Of a stretch of 39,836 nt of DNA, positions 5,601-38,700 are shown one piece after another (positions within the stretch are counted from its first letter, which is position 1; each line of letters starts with the position of its first letter). This DNA comes from Fonticula alba ATCC 38817 (Eukaryota > Protista > Nucleariida), in NCBI GenBank assembly GCA_000388065.2, contig KB932202.1. One strand, 5' to 3'. The notes beneath the pieces are model-generated. The model did no database searches, was not told the origin of the DNA, and saw only the letters and a list, made by a program, of their open reading frames with translations. A program made the position numbers and the translations under genes.

Positions 5601-6356
5601 AGGGACAATGTTACCACAGTATTGGACAATCTCGTAGAGGTTCTCCAGCGGGGTGCGGTTGTCCTGGTTCAGCAGGTAAATCTCGAGGTAGGCCAGCTGC
5701 TCGTTGGTGAGGAGGGCTGGCGGGGGGAGCCAAGGGAGACGGGCGGGGAGGGGTGTGTGTGGGTGTGTGAGGAGGGGGGGGGGCGGGGGGAAGTGGGTTA
5801 GTTTTCCTTCGGTCTCGGGAGAGGATGGCGGGGGCGAAGTTGTGGAGAGAAGAGAGGCCCGCGTCGAGGGGAGAGAGAGAGAGAGGAGTGCGCACAGAGT
5901 TCGTAGTACTGGTCGGGGGTGAGCTTGTCGGTGTGGAGCTCCTGAAGCATCTTGATGCTGTGCTCCAGGGCCTCGCGCCACTGGTTCTCATCCTATAGGC
6001 CGGTGAAAAGAGAGGTGAGTGAGAGGCGGAGTGGGTGGCAGGGCAAGCGGCCGGCGGGGGNNNNNNNNNNNNNNNNNNNNNNNNNNNNNNNNNNNNNNNN
6101 NNNNNNNNNNNNNNNNNNNNNNNNNNNNNNNNNNNNNNNNNNNNNNNNNNNNNNNNNNNNNNNNNNNNNNNNNNNNNNNNNNNNNNNNNNNNNNNNNNNN
6201 NNNNNGCGAGCGGGGGCCAGGGAAAAGGGGGAGGCGCACCAGAGAGCGCTTCATGCGAATGGAATGCTCGCGGACATTGTTGATGGCGATGGCCAGGAGT
6301 TTCTGCTGGTTCTCCTTGGACAGGGGGGCGGCGGAGGGCCGGGCAGTGGAGGACAT
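2661..6356 (-). CDS. VPS35: Retromer subunit VPS35, 7 exons
   Basis: Exons on the minus strand: 6356-6240, 5992-5896, 5716-5579, 5465-5206, 5038-3920, 3711-3085, 2930-2661. Hallmark motifs are [20 protein letters not shown] (PRLYL), [42 protein letters not shown] and [31 protein letters not shown]. Intron 1 contains the N gap 6061-6205. Confidence 0.96.
6061..6205. other. Assembly gap (N run)
   Basis: N run. The other gaps are 16408-16548, 18419-18435, 21980-22179, 31234-31322 and 37492-37547. Most abut G or C homopolymers. Confidence 1.
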
Positions 6357-25912: not shown

Positions 25913-28900
25913 TCACCGCGGGGTGCCCGGGGACGGCCCTGGCCGAGGCCGGCGCTTTCCAGTAGCCACAGACAGGTTCTGCCCCTCAGATGCAGCACCC
26001 GTCCGACTATCAGTGCTGATTTCCTGGCGGACCTTACGGAGATGCTTCTCGGCCTTGTTCTTGCTGGACGTATGTCCGTGGAACTTGTGCGACAGCTCCT
26101 TGAAGGCCTCACGCGGAGTCATCTCTCGGCCGAAGGCATCCGTGTAGCGAATGTTGACCGTCGGATCATAGTTCCGGTAGAGCGCCGTCACTTGGTTCAG
26201 ATGCTCATGCTCAATGCGTGCCCGCTCGGCTTGGATGGCCTCCTCCGAGCGGGGACGATCCAGGGCCGCCGTGGCCACGGACACCGTGGCCGAGCGGTTG
26301 CGCGCGGCCTGGTTCGACCCACGAAGCTGACGCAGGCGCTCGGCCGTCCGGCGCTCTAGCAGCATCGACTGCGCCGCCCAAACGCTCTGTCGCTCGGACC
26401 CCGGAGCCATTGGGGCCTCTAGATGGCCCTTATTCTGGACAAAACGCAAGGCACTGGCGATGCCAGCTGCCACGACCGGCTCATCGAATACCTCCAGGGC
26501 CGCTGGTTGGGGTTCGGCCGCGGTCGCACGGTGCCGGGCCCCGCGCCGGGAGCTCACCGTGTCCGGACGTGGCGGCAAATCCGGGTCATCGGAAATGGCG
26601 CCCTCCTCCTCATCGTCATCGGCGCCGGTTGAGACGCGCATCGATGCGCCACCGGCACCATCGTCGTCGCTGGAATCGGCATCACCGACGGTGGCCCCGC
26701 GGCCCTGGCCCGCCGCCGCGCCTTCGCCTGCCTCCTCCTCCGCCAAAAGAGCCTCCTCTTCGGCGGTGGCGTTGGCAACCACCTGCCGGGCGAACTCACT
26801 GGCGAAGGACAGGGTAACGCCCGTGGTGTTGGCTTGGTCCTGGTCCGGGGCCGTGGCACGGACTGGAGAAATCGAAATAACAGCCGGGCAGGCACGCGCG
26901 TGCACGCGCAGGAGCGGCGCGGAAGGTGAGTACATGATGTCCAAAAAGAGGTGAGGAGGAAGTCGGCAGAGTCATGCCGCATACAACGCACCCGCTTGGA
27001 TCGACTCATCAAGTGAGCGAATGTTTGACCGGATCTTCTTCCGCCGGGACCGAGCCAAGGAGGCCTGGAGGTCGTCATCATCCACAAAGTTGGTGTCGTC
27101 AAGACGCCGGCGGTTGCTGGAGTAACTTGCGACCGGGGCCTCATCGAGGACCGTGCTCGCAGGTGCAGCTGGCATTTCGGCGGTGGCTGATGCCGCGCCA
27201 AGGAAGAGCTCGGCTTCCTCCTGGGCAATTAAGTCGCTCACCGGCACGCGGGGGGCTCGCCGGGCCTAGGCAAGGTAAGGAAAGCGAGGGGGCATGGTCA
27301 GAGGACGACTAAGGATTAGTGGTGAGAAGCAACTCAGAGGAACACACCGCAGAACGCGCGGTCTTCTTGAAGCGAACGACCTCCTCAGCCGGAGCGAAAT
27401 CCGACTGCTGGTGTTGCTCTGACGGCAGTGGGGAATGCGGGGAAATGGAGGGGCGGGAGAGGCGACAGTCAATATGTGCCATGCAATCTTTGAGACCTTG
27501 GCATTCAAGGGAGATGAGAGAGAGAGAGAGAGAGAGAGAGAAGCACAAGACGCTGCGTGGCAACATACTAACGGCCTTGAGAGAGATGGACTCGGCCGCG
27601 CGAAGTCGCTGGGCCACATCATCGGCGGTGACCGACCTCCCGCTGGCGGCCTCAGCATTTTTCTGGGCGAAGCCGGACTCGTCAAAGTAGAAGGCCTTAC
27701 GCTCGGCACCATCACCAGCAATGTCGTCATACTTGTCGAGGATGTTGCCAGGCTTGTAGGAGTCTGAGCAGGCACAGGGGGGGGGGGGGGGGACAGGGCA
27801 CCAAGGTGAAGGAAGCATGGGGGTGAGCCAGGGAAGTGGACGTGAGAGCAGGAGGAACAGGCCAGGGAACAAGGGGCAGGAGGGGGAGAACGGTCGTAGA
27901 AACGCACCGGTGAACTCGCGATCGTCATAGGCGGTGTAGCCCTTGCGCGAGCGCTCAATGGCCTCCTTGCGCTTGGCGATCTTCTCGTTTTCCCTGAGAT
28001 CCAGGGACTCCAGCTCGTCTTCGGAGTTCTCGTCTTTATCCAAGCGGGGTGGGGGTAGTGGCAGAGGAGGATGTAAATGCACATGCAGGAAGGTATGGGG
28101 GAGGAAGGAGGCAGGCCATGGGACGGGGCAGATCGTCAGGCGGGGAGAGGCTTACCCAGGACATGCTTGTCGGCAAAGGTGAGGATGTATTCTCGGCCGG
28201 TTTCCAGATTGCCAAGATCATGGGCAACACGCAAGCCGGCCAGAGAGGCCTCCGCTGGCTCGGCGGCGGTGGCGGATTTGGCCTGGGCCTGAACCAGATC
28301 ATCCTCCTCATCGTAGCGGGAACTGGCGCGCTTGCGCATGCTGGGCAAGCAGACGTTTGAGGAGCGGTCGGCGGGATGGCACCGGGAGGAGCACGATGTT
28401 AGGGAAGTGTGTGGAGGCTGACTGGGGAGATGGCCATCCTGCGTCGGCCTTGCCCCTCCCTCAGGCACACGAGGCAGCGCACCGTTGACGATGCTTGGAA
28501 ATCCAGGACGACGTGTCGGCAGGGTCGTCCTCATCGAAATCGGCCTCGCCCAGAGACTTGGTCGGGCCAGCGGGCACGGCCGGTACCGTACTGGCCTTTC
28601 GCGTGGCGCGCTGGCTGTAGAAAGGAGATCAGTGGCCGGGGAAGGGAGTGAAAGGGGGCAGATGGGTGGTGGGCCAGGGGGGGAGGGGGGGGGGGCATTT
28701 TGTTGGGCCCATGCTCAGTGGGGGGGACATGCGCGAACCTTTCGATGCGCTCGCGCATGCGGGAGATCTCATCTTCGCTGGGGCCTGATGCCGGAGCAGG
28801 TGTCGGTGGTGTCGGGGCGCTGTCGCTTGGCTTGAGCAGCGGGAAGCCCAACTGAGCGCGAAGACGGCTGGAGAGACATGTTAGAAAATCTTGCGCCCCA

Positions 28901-28999: not shown

Positions 29000-30362
29000 G
29001 GGGGGGGGGACGGCAGCGAAGAAGCGCGCTGTAGCGTGCAGAGGAGTTCAAGGGCGAGGGCGGGAGAGGGTGGCGAGTGTGGGGGGCGGAAAGGGAGCGA
29101 GGGAAGGAAGTAAGGGAGGATGGGAGGAGCTGGGAGGAGGAATTTGCTCGGAAGTCGGCCACCGACGTTGCTGCGCAATACCCCCAATTGAGAGGATGAG
29201 AGACGAAGAAAGAGAGGGAGAGAGAGAAAAAGAAGAAAGGCAGCCGGGGAGGCCCCTCCCTCCAAGACCCGGAATCTGGGAGAAGTTAAAGCCCAAGCGA
29301 GATCGGCTATGCGTGACGGAGGATCTGATGACATGTGATCATCTGTGTGAGATTAATCGACGGGCCCCTGCGCCGCTGACTCAGTTAGAGTCGAGGGCTC
29401 ACTGACATTTCCTCGTCCATCGCCATTTCGGGCAGCGTGTCGTGCTGCCGCAGCAGCATGGGCTTGCTGCTTCAACACATCCCTCAGTTGCGCCTCTCTT
29501 GGGAGGGCCTTGCGCGCGGGGCACACACATCGTCAGCTGCTTCAAGGCAAGGGGAAAGAGAGAGAGAGAGAAAGAGAGAGACCCCGAGTCGCATGCATGG
29601 GAATGCGTCCAGACACAGCCCCGCAGCCAGCTCGTCATGCACCCTCCATTCGGCAAAATAATCGCCAGCCCCGTCTGCACCGCCACCGGGGAATGTGTCT
29701 TCCGGGACCGCCCCCCTCCCCAGAGCACCCCCCCGTCCCCTTCCTCCTCCGCTGTCAACGATAATGTGCACATGGGAGCGAATCCCCACACCGAGGGTCT
29801 GAAAAAGGCATGTGTGGTGCGCGCCGCTGCAGAGCATGTGGGACGACCCTTGGCAGAGATGCGAAAATGACAGAAAGGGAGAGGGAGAGAGAGAGAGAGA
29901 GAGAGGCGCAAAGATGGAGGTATATTCATGTTGTATTTGGTTTTGGGGATGATTTTGACACAAAACGACAAGGGAGGATATGCGCGCGCACGCGACACGA
30001 CAACACCACACACCACCAACCCCCGATATTCGCGCGGGCACATCATAGATGGACGCGGAGAGGGGGGGGGGGAAGGGGGAGGGACAGGAGGGAGCAGCGC
30101 GACCTCCAATCTTGTACGCAAGGGGGGGAAGGGAGGGGGAGGGAGGGGGGAAAGGAGGTGCGCGGGGCACATGCACACACATACACACACGTATGGGAGG
30201 CAAAACTAAGCGGCTCCTTTCACCTCGCCCTGTCGCCCTGTCGCTCCTCGCCAGGGGGGGCGGAGGAGAGAGAGAGAGAGAGAGGAAGGAGGAACAGCCA
30301 GGACACGGACATGCACATCGGCACATGTGGCGATTGGCCACGCTCGCCCCGCCCCGCCCTGC

Positions 30363-31233
30363 TTAGCACTTCTTGCCCCAGAGGGTCTCAACCCAGGCGG
30401 GGTAGTCGATGAAGGGGTTGCGGTTGCCCTGCCAGCTGTAGATGACGTTGTTGCGCTGGCGCTCGAGGGCGTTGACCGGCTCGGCACGGTGCCAGGCGAG
30501 CAGACGGCAGAGGTAACCAAGGCGGGGCTGACCGGAGGAAGTGCCGGAGTTGACGATGGTGAGGGCCGGGGTGTTGGAAGACTGGCCGGTGTAACGGGCC
30601 TCCATGTAGAAGATCATACGAGCGACCTCACCGCGGCTGCCCTTGGGCGGGCCGAAGGTGCCGGAAGCGGAGGTACCGATGGCCTTGCAGCCGGAGAGGG
30701 AGCCCTTGTAGGGGTTCAGGCAAATCTGGCTACCCTGGTCGTGGAAGTCACGGTCGCCGCGGTAGGAGTTGACGTTCTTCTCGCAGGCACGCAGGTGGTG
30801 GGCATCAGTGTAGGCGACCATGCTCTCGGAGGGGAAGCCGTGGCTCTTGGCCCAGACGTGCTCGCGGTTCCAGTAGGAGCCGGAACCACCGGTGTCCTTC
30901 TGGGACTTGGGGAAGGACTGCTGGGAGTAGATCAGGTTGACGTGGCTGGGGCTGCCGGCGACCTGGTCAGCCTGGTCGAGGATGTCCCACACGCAGGAGT
31001 AGCTGTGCTTGTAGGTGCCCTTGTGCAGGAGGCTGGACAGGGTGGCGCGCAGGCGGTTGGCGTCCTTCTGGACGGCCAGGGCGTCCTTGTAGTAGGTGGC
31101 CGAGTTGAAGGGGGGGATGCTGGGCTTCTTGCAGGCGGTAACCTCGATGACATCGGAGTTGTCGACCGGCAGAGCGACGATGGCCTGCAGGGAAGAGGCC
31201 AGCATCGCCGCCAGGAGGGCGAGAGAGAGGAGG
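30363..31233 (-). CDS. Secreted Endonuclease I / Bsn-type non-specific nuclease (His-Me finger); start codon probably in the N gap
   Basis: Uninterrupted ORF with a hydrophobic signal-like LLSLALLAAMLASSLQAIVA. It shows WNREHVWAKSHGF, TDAHHLRACEKNVNSYRGDRDF, RGEVARMIFYMEARY and LLAWHRAEPVNALERQRNNVIYSWQGNRNPFIDYPAWV, the ordered motif set of bacterial extracellular ribonuclease/endonuclease I proteins. Third codon positions are strongly G/C. Confidence 0.92.
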
Positions 31234-31322
31234 NNNNNNNNNNNNNNNNNNNNNNNNNNNNNNNNNNNNNNNNNNNNNNNNNNNNNNNNNNNNNNNNNNN
31301 NNNNNNNNNNNNNNNNNNNNNN

Positions 31323-31637
31323 GGGGGGGGGCACCGGGGAACGGTGGGAGAGGGGGGCCTGGGGGCTCGGTCGAGTGGGAAATATGGGCCAGCACTGTGC
31401 CGCGCCCCTTCCCAGGGTCCTGCCCTCAACTTTAGAAGTATTTTTTCTTCTATCTGAGTCCCTTCCCTCCCTTCGCCAGTCCGTTTCTCTCATCGCCCGC
31501 CCCGCTCTCTTGTTGTCTCCCCCCTCCCCTCACACTCGGCCCCTGTTATCTCCCTCCCCCGATCCCCCGCTGTCCGCAATCGCGACCTCCTGCTCTCTCT
31601 CTCTCTCCCCCTTCTTCTCCTCTTCCTGCCCACAGAG
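31323..31637. promoter_or_regulatory. Short divergent intergenic region (probable bidirectional promoter) between the nuclease and cold-shock genes
   Basis: The two genes are head-to-head, about 320-400 nt apart. An AT-rich island (AACTTTAGAAGTATTTTTTCTTCTATCT, 31428-31455) stands out in otherwise GC-rich DNA. Confidence 0.5.
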
Positions 31638-32191
31638 ATGCTCTCCATCGTTCGTTCCCTCCGCCCCACCGCCGTCACCCAGATGGTTGCCGCCCGCGGC
31701 TACGCCACCGGCACTGTCAAGTGGTTCAACATGACCCGTGGCTTCGGCTTCATCACCAACGAGGAGGATGACAAGGAGTACTTCGTCCACCAGACCAGCA
31801 TCAACATGATCGGCTTCCGCGGCCTGATCGAGGGTGAGCGCGTCCAGTTCGACATCACCGAGAACGACAAGGGTCCCTTCGCCACCAACATCTCTGCCCC
31901 CGATGGCCGTCCCCTGCACACCGTCCCCGGCCGTGAGCTCCGCCCCCCCGGTATGCACCGCATCCTCCCCCCCTCTCCCCCGCCCCGCCCCGCCTCACGC
32001 ATGCGTCGGTTGTGGCCCGCTTTTGGCCCTCCTTCCCATCCAAGCTCTTCTTCTCACTCATTTACGCTTCCTTTCCCGCCTCCCCCCCTCTCTCTCTCTC
32101 TCCCCCCCATCTTCCTTGTCCTCTAGTTCCCCGTGACGAGGGCCGCTTCGGCTCCCGCCGCCCCCGCCGCTTCGACGAGGACCGCGAGTAA
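31638..32191 (+). CDS. Cold-shock-domain nucleic-acid-binding protein with predicted mitochondrial presequence, 2 exons
   Basis: Exons 31638-31950 and 32127-32191 (GTATGC...TAG). The CSD has RNP1 (GTVKWFNMTRGFGFI) and RNP2 (YFVHQTSI), then GFRGLIEGERVQFDI and ATNISAPDGRPL. The tail is VPRDEGRFGSRRPRRFDEDRE*. The leader MLSIVRSLRPTAVTQMVAARGY has no acidic residues. Confidence 0.93.
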
Positions 32192-33676
32192 ATTGTGCGC
32201 CATAGCCGTTTCCCTATGCATTCCCCTCTTTCTCTCTCTCTCTCTCTGCTCCATTTCCTTCTCCCGCCTTCTCCCCGGCATCGCATGCTTACCTTCGCCT
32301 CGCCTGGTGTTCCCCCGTTTCCTCCCCTCCCGGTGTCGGTGTTGCTTCTGTCACGTCAGCTCCATGCCCTCATCTGGACGAATGGCCCACCCTGGTGTTG
32401 GGCCCCGCCTCATGCGGTAAGAGAATGGCCCGTGAGAGATGCAGGGAGGGGGATGAGAGCGGCATCTCCATGGCGCCATCTCTCTCTCTCTGTCCCCCCT
32501 CCTCCCTGCTGATCCCCTGTCCTTGCTTTCTCAGCCTTCCCCCCGCGCGGGCGCCCGACCGCCGCGCGCACCTCCTTCCTTGTCCCTCGCGCTGCGCGCG
32601 GGCCCTCACGCGTGTGTGGTTTGATCTGCCAAGAGAGGCGCGCCTCCCTTCGTAAGAGGGGGGTGGACCGCACACATGTAGGGGAGAGAAACAGAGGTAG
32701 GGGTCCGGGCGGACGGTCTGGTGAAGAGGGGAAGGAGCGAATGCGGGCTTCTTCTCATTACTCGTGAGTGTTTTCATGGGAAGTCGTCGCGCGCCCCCAC
32801 AGGGCATGTCCCTCACCCTTCTTTCTGCAGATATATACGCGCATGCATTCTCGTGCCCCCTCTCCCCTTCTCTCCTCCGTCCAGCCCTCCCTCTCTCTCT
32901 CTCTCTCCTCTTCCCCCCTCTTGGCCTGCTTCTCCCCTCTCCCGTTCACATTCGCCCCAATAAAATATATATAGTAGCCCAGCCCCCCCTCCCACGCAAG
33001 GGGCGTACGCCCATGTCATTACAAGGCACACACACACACACACACACTATAGGGCGCGCGCGGCGCCTCCTCTGCATTCCCCCCTGAAAGGAGGGCCCCA
33101 GTTGGGGGGGGGGGGAGGAGCAGGCTAAGAGGAGGGACGGGTGCGCTGTCATTCTGTTTGGTGCTTTTTTGTCTCTCGTAAATCCACATGTGCCTTTGTG
33201 TGTGGCTCTCCCCGTGTGTAGATACCGGCCACAACAACGGTATCATCTTCATGAGCGGACATGGCCCGAGCGCGGGAGCGAGAGAGGGAGAGAGATATCC
33301 CGACCGAAGGTGTGAGGACCAACAACCCCTCCGGCTCTACATGGGGGGGGGGGGGGGGGGGGGGGGGCCAGGGGGTGGGGGGGCCTGTCCCCCCCCCCCC
33401 CCCCCCGTTGACACTTGGGAATCCGGACGGGGGTGGCTGGGCCCCGCGCCACATGCGGACACATTCACGCCAGGGAGGGTGGTCGCGCGCCAGGGCCACG
33501 TTGCTCGCCGGTCCTTCACGTCTTCTTCCCAGGCGAGGCCCAGCGCTGGGATCAGGGTGCGAGGCATGCGCTACTTTGACTTGTCCCTTGTCCCCGGTGC
33601 CGCGCGCATGCGGCCCGTGCCCGCCGTCCGCCCTTAGTCCCCCTGGGCGCCCTTCGGGTGTTGGCCCCTCTTTCTT

Positions 33677-35788: not shown

Positions 35789-38700
35789 TCCAGCAGTCGT
35801 GACGGGAACCAAGCGCACAAAGGGGGCGCGCGCTCACGGTGTGCGTGTCTATGTGTATGCAGGTGGAAGGGGGGTGCGTCCGGATGGGCGATGGGGAGAG
35901 GGAAAGGCAGAGGGGCAAAGACAGGCAGGGAGGAAAAGGGGAGGGCGAGCGGGGGAGGGGGGGTGTTGCGAAAAGGCCGCCTCAGAAAGGTGGCAGCGTG
36001 TTTCAACCGCCCTGGCCTTGCCCCCCTCCTGCCTTGTGAGCGGCACCAGCAAGGGAAAAGGGGGCCAAGTGCGTGTGCCAAATCCGACCTACCAACGCTC
36101 TCGTCGTCCAGGTGCTTGATCGGGCCATGCAGGCTCTGCGATTGCAACGCACCGAATCTACAACAGCAATCTGGAATCCGACGAGAACCTTCGGGAGAAT
36201 GCCATTACGAACACAATTCAGACCCTAGCGACTGGCCCGCGCCAGCCCGCGGGTCTCGGGGCCTTGTGGTTGGTATGCGCGGCGGGGTGCGGCAAGGCGA
36301 GGCGACGGTCCGCCGGGCAGGCAACCTGCAGGCTCGACGCAGGTCCGTTTTCCGGTACAACCTGGGAGCGACGCGAAGTGTGGCTCCAGGCGCACACGTC
36401 CTAGGTCCAGGACCAGCGCGATCGACCGACGTGCCTTGTTATCACCTCGCCAGCCTTTGTCGTCCCCTCGCCCGCCCCCGCGCGCCTTTGTCCCTTCGCC
36501 CCTCTAGGCCTCGTGTGGCCACCCCTGGGCGGCTTTCTGCCAACGTGGATCTGGTACTGTTTTTGCGGCTGTGAACCCTGCACCCGGAGGCCAGTCCACG
36601 CGCGGGGGTACCTGCGCACAAAGGGCGCACAAAAGGGCGGGGCCCGGGGGCCGGCCTTAGCTTTAGAAGGGGCCGTTATGTGCCATGTGGCCCGGGTGGT
36701 TTGTATGGCCATCCGCGAACATTGTTCTCATCCGAGGCAATGGGGGGGGGGGGGGGGCTTGGACGCCCGGGTGCGTCTCCTCTCCGGGGCCCGACCTGGC
36801 ATCCGACTGACAACGTGTTTGGCCTGCGGGTTCTGGGAGGCAGGGAGGGCGGGAAGCGTGCCCTGTATTCGGTGGAGGGGGGGGGGGGGCCTTGTTGTGA
36901 GTGTCCGGGGTGGGGTGGTTGGGCACCCGGAGGGCCCGCAAGAGACCGGGCGGTGTTGGATCTTGCCATGCGGGCGCCCCTGGCCCCGAGGAGGCGCAGG
37001 TGGTCTCTGCCTCATCGTCTGGCTTTCCTCCGCCCCGACCCCGTCCAAAGGAGGGGCCTGTGTGGTGGCCTCCTCCGTGGTGCGCAGAGAGGGGGGGGGG
37101 GGGGGGGCTGGCCGAGGGCCGGGGCCATGCGTCCGAGAGCATGACGGTCGGGAGCCACGCGTGTGGCCGGCTGTGCGCGGTTGAGGGGTCGGTCCAAACT
37201 CGCGCGTATGAGTTTGTCCCCCCCCCCCCCCACACATACACGCAGACCACAAGTGCGCACATGCGCACGCGCACATGCGTAGGCCTGTCGGGCAGTCTCC
37301 TGGTTCGGCTCGGTAAAACTGTCCGTGTCTCGGGGATGAGCCATTTCCGGCCTGGCACTTGCCTCCCCCTCCCCCTCTCGGAGGACGCATGGGGCAGCCG
37401 GGGGAACGGAAGGGTATTGGCGGAACACACGGCAGACGGGACTGGGGCGGAGCAGGGCGGGTGGCCAAGTGGCTGGGTGGTCGGCTGGGGGNNNNNNNNN
37501 NNNNNNNNNNNNNNNNNNNNNNNNNNNNNNNNNNNNNNNNNNNNNNNTAGCGGGGGAGGGGGGGGGCGCGGCAGGGAGAGAGGGAAGGGGGAGGGGAGGA
37601 CCGGGGCAAAAGGAGACGCACAGTACAACACAAAGTGTCGATGTCGGCCTCCCCAGCGGAAGAGCCCCCACGACGGGGCCTAATAAGTCCAGGCCGGTGC
37701 GCGGGCGAGGACCGTGCACCAGGCGCACGGGCGCGCGCACGCGCGCCCACCAGACGGACCCGTCGGTTGCCGCAGTCTGGGAGTAAACAAACCACTCGAC
37801 CGGAAAGAGGGGGGGCGTACCCGGGCGTGAGAGCGGCCAAGACGGGAGCGGGGCCTGCACAGAGGCCCGACGAGACGGGCGCCGTCCGGGGGGGAGAGGG
37901 GGGGGGGGTGCCTTGCCCGGGCGGCGAGGGCAGGGCAGGTGGCGGCAACCTGAGGGGCCCGGGGGCCTCCGACCAAGGGAACAGGCCCGGCAGACTCCGC
38001 GCCCCGGGACCGGACCGCCCGACCGACACGCCGGCCCCCGCCCCCGCCCCAGCCGCGCCCCCCGCCCCCCGTGCTCCCCCCGCCGCCAGACGGCGCTGGG
38101 CGGGAATTCCCCCCCCCCTTCCGGCATCCCGCCCGCGGGGAGAGGGGGGGGGGGGGGAACGGGGTTGTTATTGTTCCCGGAGACGGAAAAGCCCCGGCCA
38201 GGCCCCGGCCCCGGCTCCCGGCCGCGCGCACCCGGCCGGCCACCGGGGCCTTTTTCGGAGCCTGGATGACCGGACACAACTGACGCCGGAACGCATACCT
38301 GCGCTCCTACATCCCCCCCTCCCACACACAAGGGTCACAGACGCCACGGCCATCCGGGGAGCCCGGCGCAGGAGGAGCATTTCTGGGGCCGCATAAAAAA
38401 GACCGGAACTCAAGCCATGCTACGGGGCGGCCCCCGCGCGTGGCCCGCTCTCCCTCGCCCGCCGACCGCCAGCTGCTCGTGGAAGAGCGCCAGCCCACGA
38501 GGGAGGAGGATCGCCCACGCTTACTGGGCCCCGAAAAGATCACAGTGTCCAGGCTATCTAGGCCCGTCTCCCCCCCCCCCCCCTCGCCGGCACATTCACG
38601 ACGTCCGCTCCCCCGGGGGCCCCTCTCTCCGCCCGGCCTGTTGTCGGGTGAAAAGACCGTCCGAGCTGGTATTCGCCCGCTCTCAATGTGGCCGCGAAAT

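What the first reader, a model, noticed from the sequence alone, without database searches (positions are those of the whole stretch)
30363..31233. Intronless bacterial-type secreted nuclease embedded in an intron-rich eukaryotic locus: HGT candidate
Seen: an 870-nt visible coding stretch with no intron, whereas all nine neighbours have introns. It carries a signal-like leader, the complete Endonuclease I/Bsn motif series including the catalytic His (NREHVW) and metal-binding Asn (VNSYRG), and several extra Cys. Its 3' side runs without a gap into host-type CT/CA-repeat DNA and on to SART1, which argues against contamination. Codon usage is as G/C-ending as the host's biased genes. Established: this family is typical of bacteria (Bacillus Bsn, Vibrio/E. 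coli EndA-type) and I do not know it as a core opisthokont gene. Inference: an ameliorated, probably well-expressed horizontal acquisition used to digest prey or biofilm nucleic acid, or to scavenge phosphate.
Basis: partly seen in the sequence, partly recalled or inferred. Interest (0 to 1): 0.8.

Follow-up and report, generated by a model that had tools for sequence, protein, structure and literature searches.

The report
Secreted bacterial-type nuclease gene, expressed
This is a real, transcribed, intron-free gene for a secreted DNA/RNA-cutting enzyme of a type best known from bacteria. Its closest relatives are unnamed protist-like sequences and a giant-virus-like sequence, so it is an old borrowing shared with others, not a recent theft from prey.

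Summary
On the minus strand, 30363-31233 is an unspliced reading frame for a complete Endonuclease I domain (Pfam PF04231, E 9e-37).

- **Closest studied proteins:** the Bacillus secreted RNase Bsn (35-37% identity), then Vibrio Vvn and Endonuclease I by fold.
- **Expression and start:** a 2012 RNA run holds a 1005-nt unspliced contig over the gene. It runs 26 nt into the N gap and supplies the start, MSLKL, joined in frame. The protein is therefore 294 aa with a classic signal peptide. The public 280-aa model starts 14 residues too late.
- **Codon use:** as strongly C-ending as in the neighbouring spliced gene.

The horizontal-transfer reading is only partly supported. The gene sits in a well-supported clade (100/98) with eight environmental sequences at 41-53% identity. 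All nine share an 8-9-residue Cys-bearing insert that bacterial copies lack. One lies on a giant-virus-like contig and one is a polyadenylated transcript. This clade is nested among Pseudomonadota-type sequences, beside copies from the holozoan Syssomonas and from Enterovibrio. Bacterial ancestry is likely, but the transfer is old and not private to this organism. A single origin for all eukaryotic copies is not rejected (AU p 0.25).

Earlier scan notes name the genome Fonticula alba. One of them (s1-065519) reached a similar verdict for another intronless "bacterial" gene on another piece of this genome.

Function is untested. Interest is modest.

The parts
30363..31233 (-). Visible part of the single-exon coding sequence of the nuclease (stop codon 30363-30365). 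The first 14 nt of the CDS lie in the assembly gap.
   Evidence: ORF list. Pfam PF04231 E 9e-37. Unspliced RNA contig colinear with 30297-31233.
31234..31322 (.). Assembly gap (89 N) hiding the start codon and 5' UTR. The real missing stretch may be only about 21 nt.
   Evidence: The RNA contig runs 26 letters past 31233. Read on the minus strand, these give 12 nt of UTR and then ATG TCT CTC AAG CT in frame. Its 5' C-run matches the G-run that follows the gap at 31323; this last point is inference.
31170..31233 (-). Visible part of the signal peptide: residues 5 (last codon base only) to 26 of the 294-aa protein, hydrophobic core LLLSLALLAAMLA. The cleavage site is not predicted with a tool.
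   Evidence: Translation. Relatives carry hydrophobic leaders at the same place.
30858..30872 (-). WNREH motif. The His (30858-30860) is the presumed general base at the end of the first strand of the beta-beta-alpha-metal core.
   Evidence: Invariant in 40 aligned sequences. Residues 121-125 of the 289-aa model are a strand, followed by strand 147-151 and helix 152-158.
30768..30770 (-). Asn of VNSYRG, the presumed Mg2+ ligand on the core helix.
   Evidence: Invariant. Aligns to the Asn of EVNGDRS in Vvn and E. coli EndA.
30687..30722 (-). Clade-specific insert C-L-N-P-Y-K-G-S-L-S-G-C with an extra Cys. All nine members of the protist/giant-virus clade share it. Bacterial, diatom and Syssomonas copies lack it.
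   Evidence: Alignment A3.
30297..30362 (-). 3' UTR covered by the RNA contig. The contig has 42 more letters that the tool did not lay, because it skips the CT/GA repeat at 30121-30296.
   Evidence: table 8.
31638..32400 (+). Neighbouring cold-shock-domain gene, divergently oriented and spliced. It serves as the host-gene control.
   Evidence: RNA contig with GT..AG joints 31949>32126 and 32194>32360.
25916..26944 (-). C-terminal exon(s) of a SART-1 family gene, downstream on the same strand.
   Evidence: Pfam PF03343 E 3.7e-38, model positions 332-585 of 585.

Best explanation
The locus is a genuine, transcribed, single-exon nuclear gene of a GC-rich amoeboid protist. Earlier scan notes call it Fonticula alba; I did not verify that independently.

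**Product.** A 294-residue secretory-pathway protein: a cleavable signal peptide followed by one Endonuclease I (His-Me finger, beta-beta-alpha-metal) domain of the Bsn-like branch.

**Inferred mechanism, from the family.** A Mg2+-dependent, sequence-nonspecific nuclease. The His of WNREH activates water, the Asn of VNSYRG holds the metal, and disulfides make the enzyme competent only after export. It most likely degrades nucleic acid released from bacterial prey, either outside the cell or in the phagosome. The products would feed nucleotide and phosphate uptake.

**Evolution.** It belongs to a distinct clade shared by unnamed protist-like sequences and at least one giant-virus-like sequence, marked by an extra Cys-bearing loop. 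That clade descends from Pseudomonadota-type bacterial nucleases through an old transfer. It is not a recent capture from prey.
For: **Shown**
- Family membership: Pfam E 9e-37 with full model coverage.
- AF2 model with pLDDT 91.5. Best solved folds are Vvn and Vibrio Endonuclease I (probability 1.00, TM by target 0.59-0.65). Best reviewed proteins are Bacillus Bsn (35-37% identity, TM 0.75).
- Catalytic His and Asn are invariant.
- An unspliced RNA contig covers the gene, while the neighbouring gene's contig in the same run is spliced.
- Start codon and signal peptide are recovered from that RNA contig.
- Codon usage is host-like: GC3 0.90, r = 0.86.
- An independent 2025 DNA run holds 30311-31221 without mismatch.
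- The clade of nine has support 100/98 and 99/99 and a shared insert.
- One member lies on a 10.3-kb contig with DUF5759, DUF5856, DUF5672, DNA polymerase X, patatin and thioredoxin genes packed tightly. DUF5759 clusters in the Atlas are 100% Nucleocytoviricota.
- One member's contig ends in poly(A).
- The clade sits inside a 78-row group otherwise made of Pseudomonadota-type proteins (92/96). The next row out has a bacterioferritin/Bfd neighbourhood.

**Inferred**
- Activity, metal dependence, destination and physiological role.
Against: - No enzymatic, localisation or secretome data exist here.
- Bsn is an RNase while Vvn and EndA cut DNA and RNA, so substrate preference is open.
- Family members studied so far work at neutral to alkaline pH (from memory). 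This fits the outside of the cell better than an acid phagolysosome.
- The tree is unrooted. Relationships inside the clade are unresolved, so the direction of exchange between protists and virus cannot be read.
- One origin for all eukaryotic copies is not rejected (AU p 0.246), so several transfers are not demonstrated.
- Most clade members come from contigs of about 1 kb whose organisms are unknown.
- The restored N-terminus rests on a single assembled RNA contig.
- The mature protein has seven Cys, an odd number, so one is unpaired or the pairing differs from Vvn.
Confidence: 0.6

Rival explanations
1. Recent transfer private to this organism: the amoeba captured the gene from bacteria it eats.
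For: The family is mostly bacterial (PMC5714182). The gene is intronless beside a spliced neighbour. The organism is said to feed on bacteria (earlier notes; own knowledge).
Against: The best bacterial matches are only 44-50% identical. Codon use is indistinguishable from a strongly biased host gene. The closest kin are a non-bacterial clade with a shared insert. An Enterobacter copy is far away in the tree.
Confidence: 0.04
2. Vertical inheritance: the nuclease was already present in an early eukaryote or early opisthokont and was lost many times. No transfer into this lineage is needed.
For: Another opisthokont, Syssomonas multiformis, has a copy that falls next to the clade (96/86 for the 12-row set). 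A single clade of all named eukaryotic copies is not rejected (AU p 0.246).
Against: No copy from fungi, animals, choanoflagellates or nucleariids appeared among the 120 best hits of three searches of a collection that includes EukProt. Diatom copies form a separate clade (100/99) among bacterial rows. Enterovibrio nigricans groups with Syssomonas rather than with other bacteria.
Confidence: 0.15
3. Giant-virus route: the gene moved between protists through Nucleocytoviricota, and this copy was left in the host genome by a virus (or the virus took it from such a host).
For: A clade member lies on a compact 10.3-kb contig with giant-virus marker families. Named giant viruses carry more distant Endonuclease I folds.
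Against: The window shows no other viral gene near the nuclease. The flanks are spliced host genes within 0.4-3.5 kb. The viral branch is not the window's sister in any supported way. The viral nature of the contig rests on Pfam DUFs and gene packing, not on a capsid or polymerase B hallmark.
Confidence: 0.2
4. Contaminant or assembly artefact: a bacterial contig was scaffolded into a eukaryotic assembly across the N gap.
For: An N gap touches the 5' end of the gene. The 2025 DNA contigs break at the flanking repeats and bridge nothing.
Against: Codon bias is host-type. The 3' side is continuous with host repeat DNA and the SART-1 gene. RNA of the organism holds the gene. In the one run laid, the neighbour's contig is spliced. 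The nearest relatives are not bacterial.
Confidence: 0.01

Closest known systems
Bsn, the extracellular Mg2+-activated ribonuclease of Bacillus subtilis / B. amyloliquefaciens (UniProt O32150, Q03091)
   Same: Same Pfam family and same length class (288-289 aa). Signal peptide plus a single domain. 35-37% identity and TM 0.75 over residues 22-285.
   Different: The Bacillus enzymes lack the Cys-bearing insert (the Bacillus-type rows sit far away in the tree). Bsn is described as an RNase (PMC5714182). The substrate here is unknown.
Vvn of Vibrio vulnificus and Endonuclease I of Vibrio cholerae / V. salmonicida / E. coli EndA (PDB 1OUO, 1OUP, 2G7E, 2PU3, 2VND)
   Same: Same fold (Foldseek probability 1.00, TM by target 0.59-0.65). 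The metal-binding Asn segment and the C-terminal helical part align. All are exported, disulfide-dependent enzymes (PMC5714182).
   Different: Only 17-19% identity. The N-terminal half, including the His strand, does not align by sequence profile. This protein is about 60 residues longer.
Single-domain Endonuclease I proteins of marine and freshwater Pseudomonadota (MAGs of Oleiphilaceae, Methylomonas, Kiloniellaceae, Betaproteobacteria)
   Same: 42-46% identity for these named MAGs and up to 50% for the best unnamed hits. They share the N-terminal Cys-x-K-P motif, the catalytic motifs and the C-terminal Cys, and form the surrounding part of the tree.
   Different: They have C-x2-C where this clade has the longer Cys loop. 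Many carry C-terminal extensions.
Eukaryotic Endonuclease I copies: diatoms (Proboscia and other MMETSP transcripts) and Syssomonas multiformis
   Same: Same family, secreted or membrane-anchored, 39-44% identity.
   Different: They lack the insert and carry C-terminal tails with a membrane anchor. The diatom copies form their own clade.

Membership tests
Endonuclease I (Pfam PF04231; His-Me finger group 9) | Match to the family model above the curated threshold over its whole length | tested here: met
   127.5 bits against a cutoff of 25, E 9e-37, model positions 4-234 of 235.
Endonuclease I (Pfam PF04231; His-Me finger group 9) | Beta-beta-alpha-metal core with a catalytic His at the end of the first strand | tested here: met
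   WNREH is invariant in 40 sequences. The AF2 model has strand 121-125, strand 147-151 and helix 152-158. Equivalence to the catalytic His of Vvn comes through the Pfam model and the fold match, not a direct residue alignment (searches did not align this part).
Endonuclease I (Pfam PF04231; His-Me finger group 9) | Metal-binding Asn on the core helix (the E-V-N-G-D-R-S segment of Vvn and EndA) | tested here: met
   The profile alignment to 1OUP/1OUO and hhalign to E. coli EndA both pair K-N-V-N-S-Y-R-G with E-V-N-G-D-R-S/G. The Asn is invariant.
Endonuclease I (Pfam PF04231; His-Me finger group 9) | Fold like the solved members | tested here: met
   The seven best PDB matches are all Vvn or Vibrio Endonuclease I, with probability 1.00 and TM by target 0.59-0.65.
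Endonuclease I (Pfam PF04231; His-Me finger group 9) | Export signal and conserved Cys for disulfides | tested here: met
   N-terminus MSLK followed by a 13-residue hydrophobic core, from RNA plus window. Four Cys columns are conserved in at least 90% of 40 sequences. Actual cleavage and disulfide pairing are not testable here.
Endonuclease I (Pfam PF04231; His-Me finger group 9) | Mg2+-dependent nonspecific nuclease activity | not testable with these tools
   Needs recombinant enzyme.
Bsn-like branch of PF04231 | Full-length similarity to Bacillus Bsn rather than to EndA/Vvn | tested here: met
   35-37% identity and TM 0.75 to O32150 and Q03091, against 18-21% to the EndA, Dns and NucM proteins.
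Bsn-like branch of PF04231 | Preference for RNA | not testable with these tools
   No assay.
Recent bacterium-to-eukaryote transfer | Sister to a defined bacterial lineage at high identity, with foreign composition | tested here: not met
   Best bacterial identity is 44-50%. The sisters are non-bacterial or mixed. Codon use is host-like.
Ancient transfer of bacterial origin | Clade nested within bacterial diversity with support | tested here: inconclusive
   It is nested in a Pseudomonadota-rich group (92/96 and 98 local support). But the trees are unrooted, most rows are unlabelled, and one eukaryotic origin is not rejected.

The most novel reading that the evidence does not exclude
A previously undescribed branch of Bsn-like nucleases, marked by an extra disulfide loop, circulates among heterotrophic protists and their giant viruses. 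This cultured amoeba is the only sequenced cellular organism known to carry it, and uses it as an abundantly expressed secreted enzyme to liquefy and harvest nucleic acid while it feeds collectively on bacterial lawns.
Probability: 0.25. Interest if true: 0.45.

Novelty: new member of a known kind. Interest (0 to 1): 0.3.

Why it matters
- **Annotation fix.** It corrects a public gene model: the real start and signal peptide sit in an assembly gap.
- **Interpretation.** A tempting "stolen from prey" story becomes a more ordinary one: an old, domesticated, bacterial-type digestive enzyme shared with other protist-like sequences and at least one giant-virus-like sequence.
- **Possible use.** If the enzyme is secreted during feeding, it would be a handy marker and reagent for studying how this relative of fungi digests bacteria.
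- **Open thread.** The protist/giant-virus clade is a small example of gene traffic that could be followed with labelled genomes.
- **Limit.** It does not open a new kind of biology.

Tried and rejected
1. **Vvn comparison.** A single-sequence search of solved structures found Vvn only weakly (E 0.009), below a spurious hit at E 0.002. A profile of the His-strand region alone found nothing. hhalign to E. coli EndA aligned only the C-terminal half. The catalytic His is therefore assigned through Pfam, invariance and the model, not by residue alignment to Vvn.
2. **Withdrawn intron.** I first read a 95-nt GT..AG intron in the gene beside the nuclease on contig L092 and took it as proof of a eukaryotic genome. 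The longer sister contig L179 showed tightly packed genes with giant-virus families. I withdraw the intron reading.
3. **Collection scans.** The viral collection gave only two distant loci at 35% and 32%.
4. **Reads.** Raw RNA reads of two 2026 runs labelled organism B gave no reads on 2.8 kb, which is no test. DNA contigs break at the repeats, so physical linkage across the gap could not be shown from reads.
5. **Papers.** Searches for this gene in Fonticula, and for eukaryotic members of the family, found nothing specific. The Vvn structure paper is not held.
6. **NCBIfam.** It gave only a sub-threshold match to the enterobacterial deoxyribonuclease I model (26.7 bits against 372). The gene is not an EndA equivalog.
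7. **Species name.** I did not verify the organism's name myself. It comes from earlier agents' notes.

Full report
**What is in the sequence**

Between 30363 and 31233 the minus strand carries an open frame that ends at a TAA (30363-30365). At its 5' end it runs into 89 N (31234-31322). The 289 visible residues match Pfam Endonuclease_1 (PF04231) at E 9e-37 over model positions 4-234 of 235. NCBIfam gives only a sub-threshold match to the enterobacterial deoxyribonuclease I model, so the gene is not an EndA equivalog.

In a 40-sequence alignment, W-N-R-E-H, D-x-H, the Asn of V-N-S-Y-R and the following Arg are invariant. Four Cys columns are at least 90% conserved.

An AlphaFold2 model built on that alignment has mean pLDDT 91.5. 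It shows strand 121-125 (WNREH), strand 147-151 and helix 152-158 (holding the Asn). That is the beta-beta-alpha-metal arrangement.

- The best solved folds are Vvn and the Vibrio Endonuclease I structures (probability 1.00, TM by target 0.59-0.65, 17-19% identity).
- The best reviewed proteins are the extracellular ribonuclease Bsn of Bacillus amyloliquefaciens and B. subtilis (35-37% identity, TM 0.75 over residues 22-285).
- Profile alignments to Vvn and to E. coli EndA pair the local K-N-V-N-S-Y-R-G with their E-V-N-G-D-R segment.
- The His strand could not be aligned to them by sequence.

**Expression, intron status and the missing start**

Runs from 2012 labelled as RNA hold 95-100% of the gene's sampled words. 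When laid on 29600-32400, one of them gives a 1005-nt contig (word depth 648) that is colinear with 30297-31233. It has no mismatch and no joint. The contig for the divergent cold-shock-domain gene in the same run shows two GT..AG joints, 31949>32126 and 32194>32360. The run therefore holds processed mRNA, and the nuclease message is unspliced.

The contig runs 26 letters into the gap. On the coding strand these read as 12 nt of leader, then ATG TCT CTC AAG CT, which joins base 31233 in frame. The protein therefore starts MSLKLLLSLALLAAMLASSLQAIVALPVD and has 294 residues. The leader has a short charged head, a 13-residue hydrophobic core and small residues after it, which is a classic signal peptide.

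The public model of this gene (280 aa; present in NCBI, UniRef and EukProt) starts at an internal Met, 14 residues too late. The contig's 5' C-run matches the G-run just after the gap, so the true gap is probably about 21 nt. That last point is inference.

A 2025 DNA run holds 30311-31221 without mismatch, but its contigs stop at the flanking repeats and bridge nothing.

**Host character**

Third-position GC is 0.90, with 67% C-ending and 0% A-ending codons. This is the same extreme pattern as the cold-shock exon (0.88; 69% C). The correlation of codon fractions with four host ORFs is 0.86. The 3' UTR runs into a CT repeat. On the same strand further on lies a SART-1 family ORF (25916-26944, E 3.7e-38). 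Contamination can be dismissed.

**Relatives**

Three word-indexed searches and one exhaustive search found thousands of homologues. Nearly all those with a name are bacterial. Named genomes at 42-46% identity are mostly Gammaproteobacteria (Rheinheimera, Shewanella, Marinomonas, Psychromonas, an Oleiphilaceae MAG), plus Alpha- and Betaproteobacteria, then Actinomycetota and Bacillota.

The closest sequences are not on bacterial contigs. Eight environmental proteins stand out: P0002, P0003, P0266-P0269, P0029 and P0130.

- They are 41-53% identical to the window protein. The six of them that rank directly after the query rows in the profile search score 391-546 bits, against 320 or less for everything else.
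- They share with the window protein an 8-9-residue insert, C-x-x-P-Y...C. Bacterial, diatom and Syssomonas copies have a short C-x2-C there instead.
- The nine form a clade with support 100/98 in a 91-row IQ-TREE analysis and 99/99 in a focused 24-row one. Nothing inside the clade is resolved.
- Most lie on contigs of about 1 kb holding one gene with short flanks, recovered in many samples. One ends in poly(A).
- A near-identical copy of P0029 lies on a 10.3-kb contig with closely packed genes on both strands. These include DUF5759, DUF5856, DUF5672, a family X DNA polymerase, patatin, thioredoxin and an HMG-box protein.
- The DUF5759 clusters of the Atlas are 100% Nucleocytoviricota. I read that contig as a giant-virus fragment, and I withdraw an intron I had inferred on its shorter twin.

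**Position of the clade**

In the careful tree the clade's sister side holds three rows, and the set of twelve has support 96/86:

- P0154, which the cluster table identifies as Syssomonas multiformis, a holozoan;
- the Enterovibrio nigricans protein;
- an unnamed sequence.

Next out is a protein with a bacterioferritin/Bfd neighbourhood. All of this is nested in a 78-row group of Pseudomonadota-type single-domain proteins (92/96). That group also contains a separate clade (100/99) with the diatom transcripts.

Forcing the nine, the three diatom-type sequences and Syssomonas into one clade against the named bacteria costs 21 log-likelihood units. The AU test does not reject it (p 0.246).

The 2017 survey of His-Me finger nucleases counted 5245 bacterial and 79 eukaryotic members of this Pfam family (PMC5714182). 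Named giant viruses have more distant members of the fold.

**Reading**

The family is bacterial in the main, and this clade is embedded among proteobacterial sequences, so bacterial ancestry is the likeliest origin. Four things show that the event is old and not private to this organism:

- the depth of the clade;
- its derived insert;
- its mixed protist-like and virus-like membership;
- the fully host-like codon usage.

Whether the gene reached this lineage directly, from another eukaryote or through a giant virus cannot be told from these data. Descent from an early opisthokont is a minority possibility kept alive by the Syssomonas copy.

**Function**

By homology the product is an exported, disulfide-stabilised, Mg2+-dependent nonspecific nuclease. 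PMC5714182 describes the family's dependence on oxidising conditions. Its nearest characterised relative is an RNase, and its structural relatives cut DNA and RNA, so the substrate is open.

The protein has a signal peptide, no membrane anchor and no retention signal. I infer that it digests nucleic acid from bacterial prey, outside the cell or in the phagosome. None of this was tested.

- The transfer hypothesis is partly supported: bacterial type and probably bacterial ancestry, but not an isolated or recent acquisition.
- The family is not unknown in opisthokonts or other eukaryotes.
- An earlier follow-up in this scan (s1-065519) reached a similar conclusion for another intronless "bacterial" gene of the same genome. 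The organism's name, Fonticula alba, comes from such notes, and I did not verify it.

**Verdict**

This is a real gene that is already in public databases (with a truncated start), and a new member of a known family. It has a mildly interesting protist/giant-virus sub-clade. Interest 0.3.

Noticed in passing
window 31234-31322 and 31197-31233: The public 280-aa protein model starts at an internal Met because the true ATG lies in the N gap. One RNA contig supplies it and suggests the gap is about 21 nt rather than 89.
   Followed up: yes
window 31638-32400: The cold-shock-domain gene next door is transcribed and spliced at 31949>32126 and 32194>32360 (both GT..AG). Its first exon has the same extreme C-ending codon bias as the nuclease.
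   Followed up: partly
L179:1-10319 (and L180, L181, L092): An environmental contig carries a Bsn-like nuclease of the same clade among tightly packed genes: DUF5672, HMG box, DUF5856, DUF5759, patatin, thioredoxin, family X DNA polymerase. It is probably a giant-virus fragment. No capsid or B-family polymerase lies on the piece.
   Followed up: partly
P0020/P0339 (Enterovibrio nigricans) with P0154 (Syssomonas multiformis): A Vibrionaceae endonuclease groups with a holozoan transcript and next to the protist/virus clade, away from other Gammaproteobacteria (94/77 and 96/86). This could be long-branch attraction, or a transfer in the other direction.
   Followed up: no
runs X6, X10, X12, X13 against X18-X24: DNA runs of 2025 labelled 'organism B' hold the gene at 72-100% of words. 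Two large 2026 RNA runs with the same label gave no read on 2.8 kb that includes two expressed genes. Either the label covers something other than this organism, or the DNA runs are mixed cultures.
   Followed up: no
runs X11, X14, X15: Sediment, soil and sludge metagenomes hold 14-83% of the gene's 31-mers. The organism or very close strains therefore occur in such habitats.
   Followed up: no
L002:340-470: A tandem repeat with a unit of about 11 nt (aacaattcggc and variants) lies upstream of the P0003 nuclease gene on an environmental contig of unknown origin.
   Followed up: no
L182 (IMG/VR UViG 2791354993_000002): A 28.7-kb viral-collection contig encodes a full-length relative at 35% identity. 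The type of virus was not examined.
   Followed up: no
window, whole: The window holds 648 N in several gaps (first at 6061, last at 37547). Other gene models here may be truncated in the same way.
   Followed up: no
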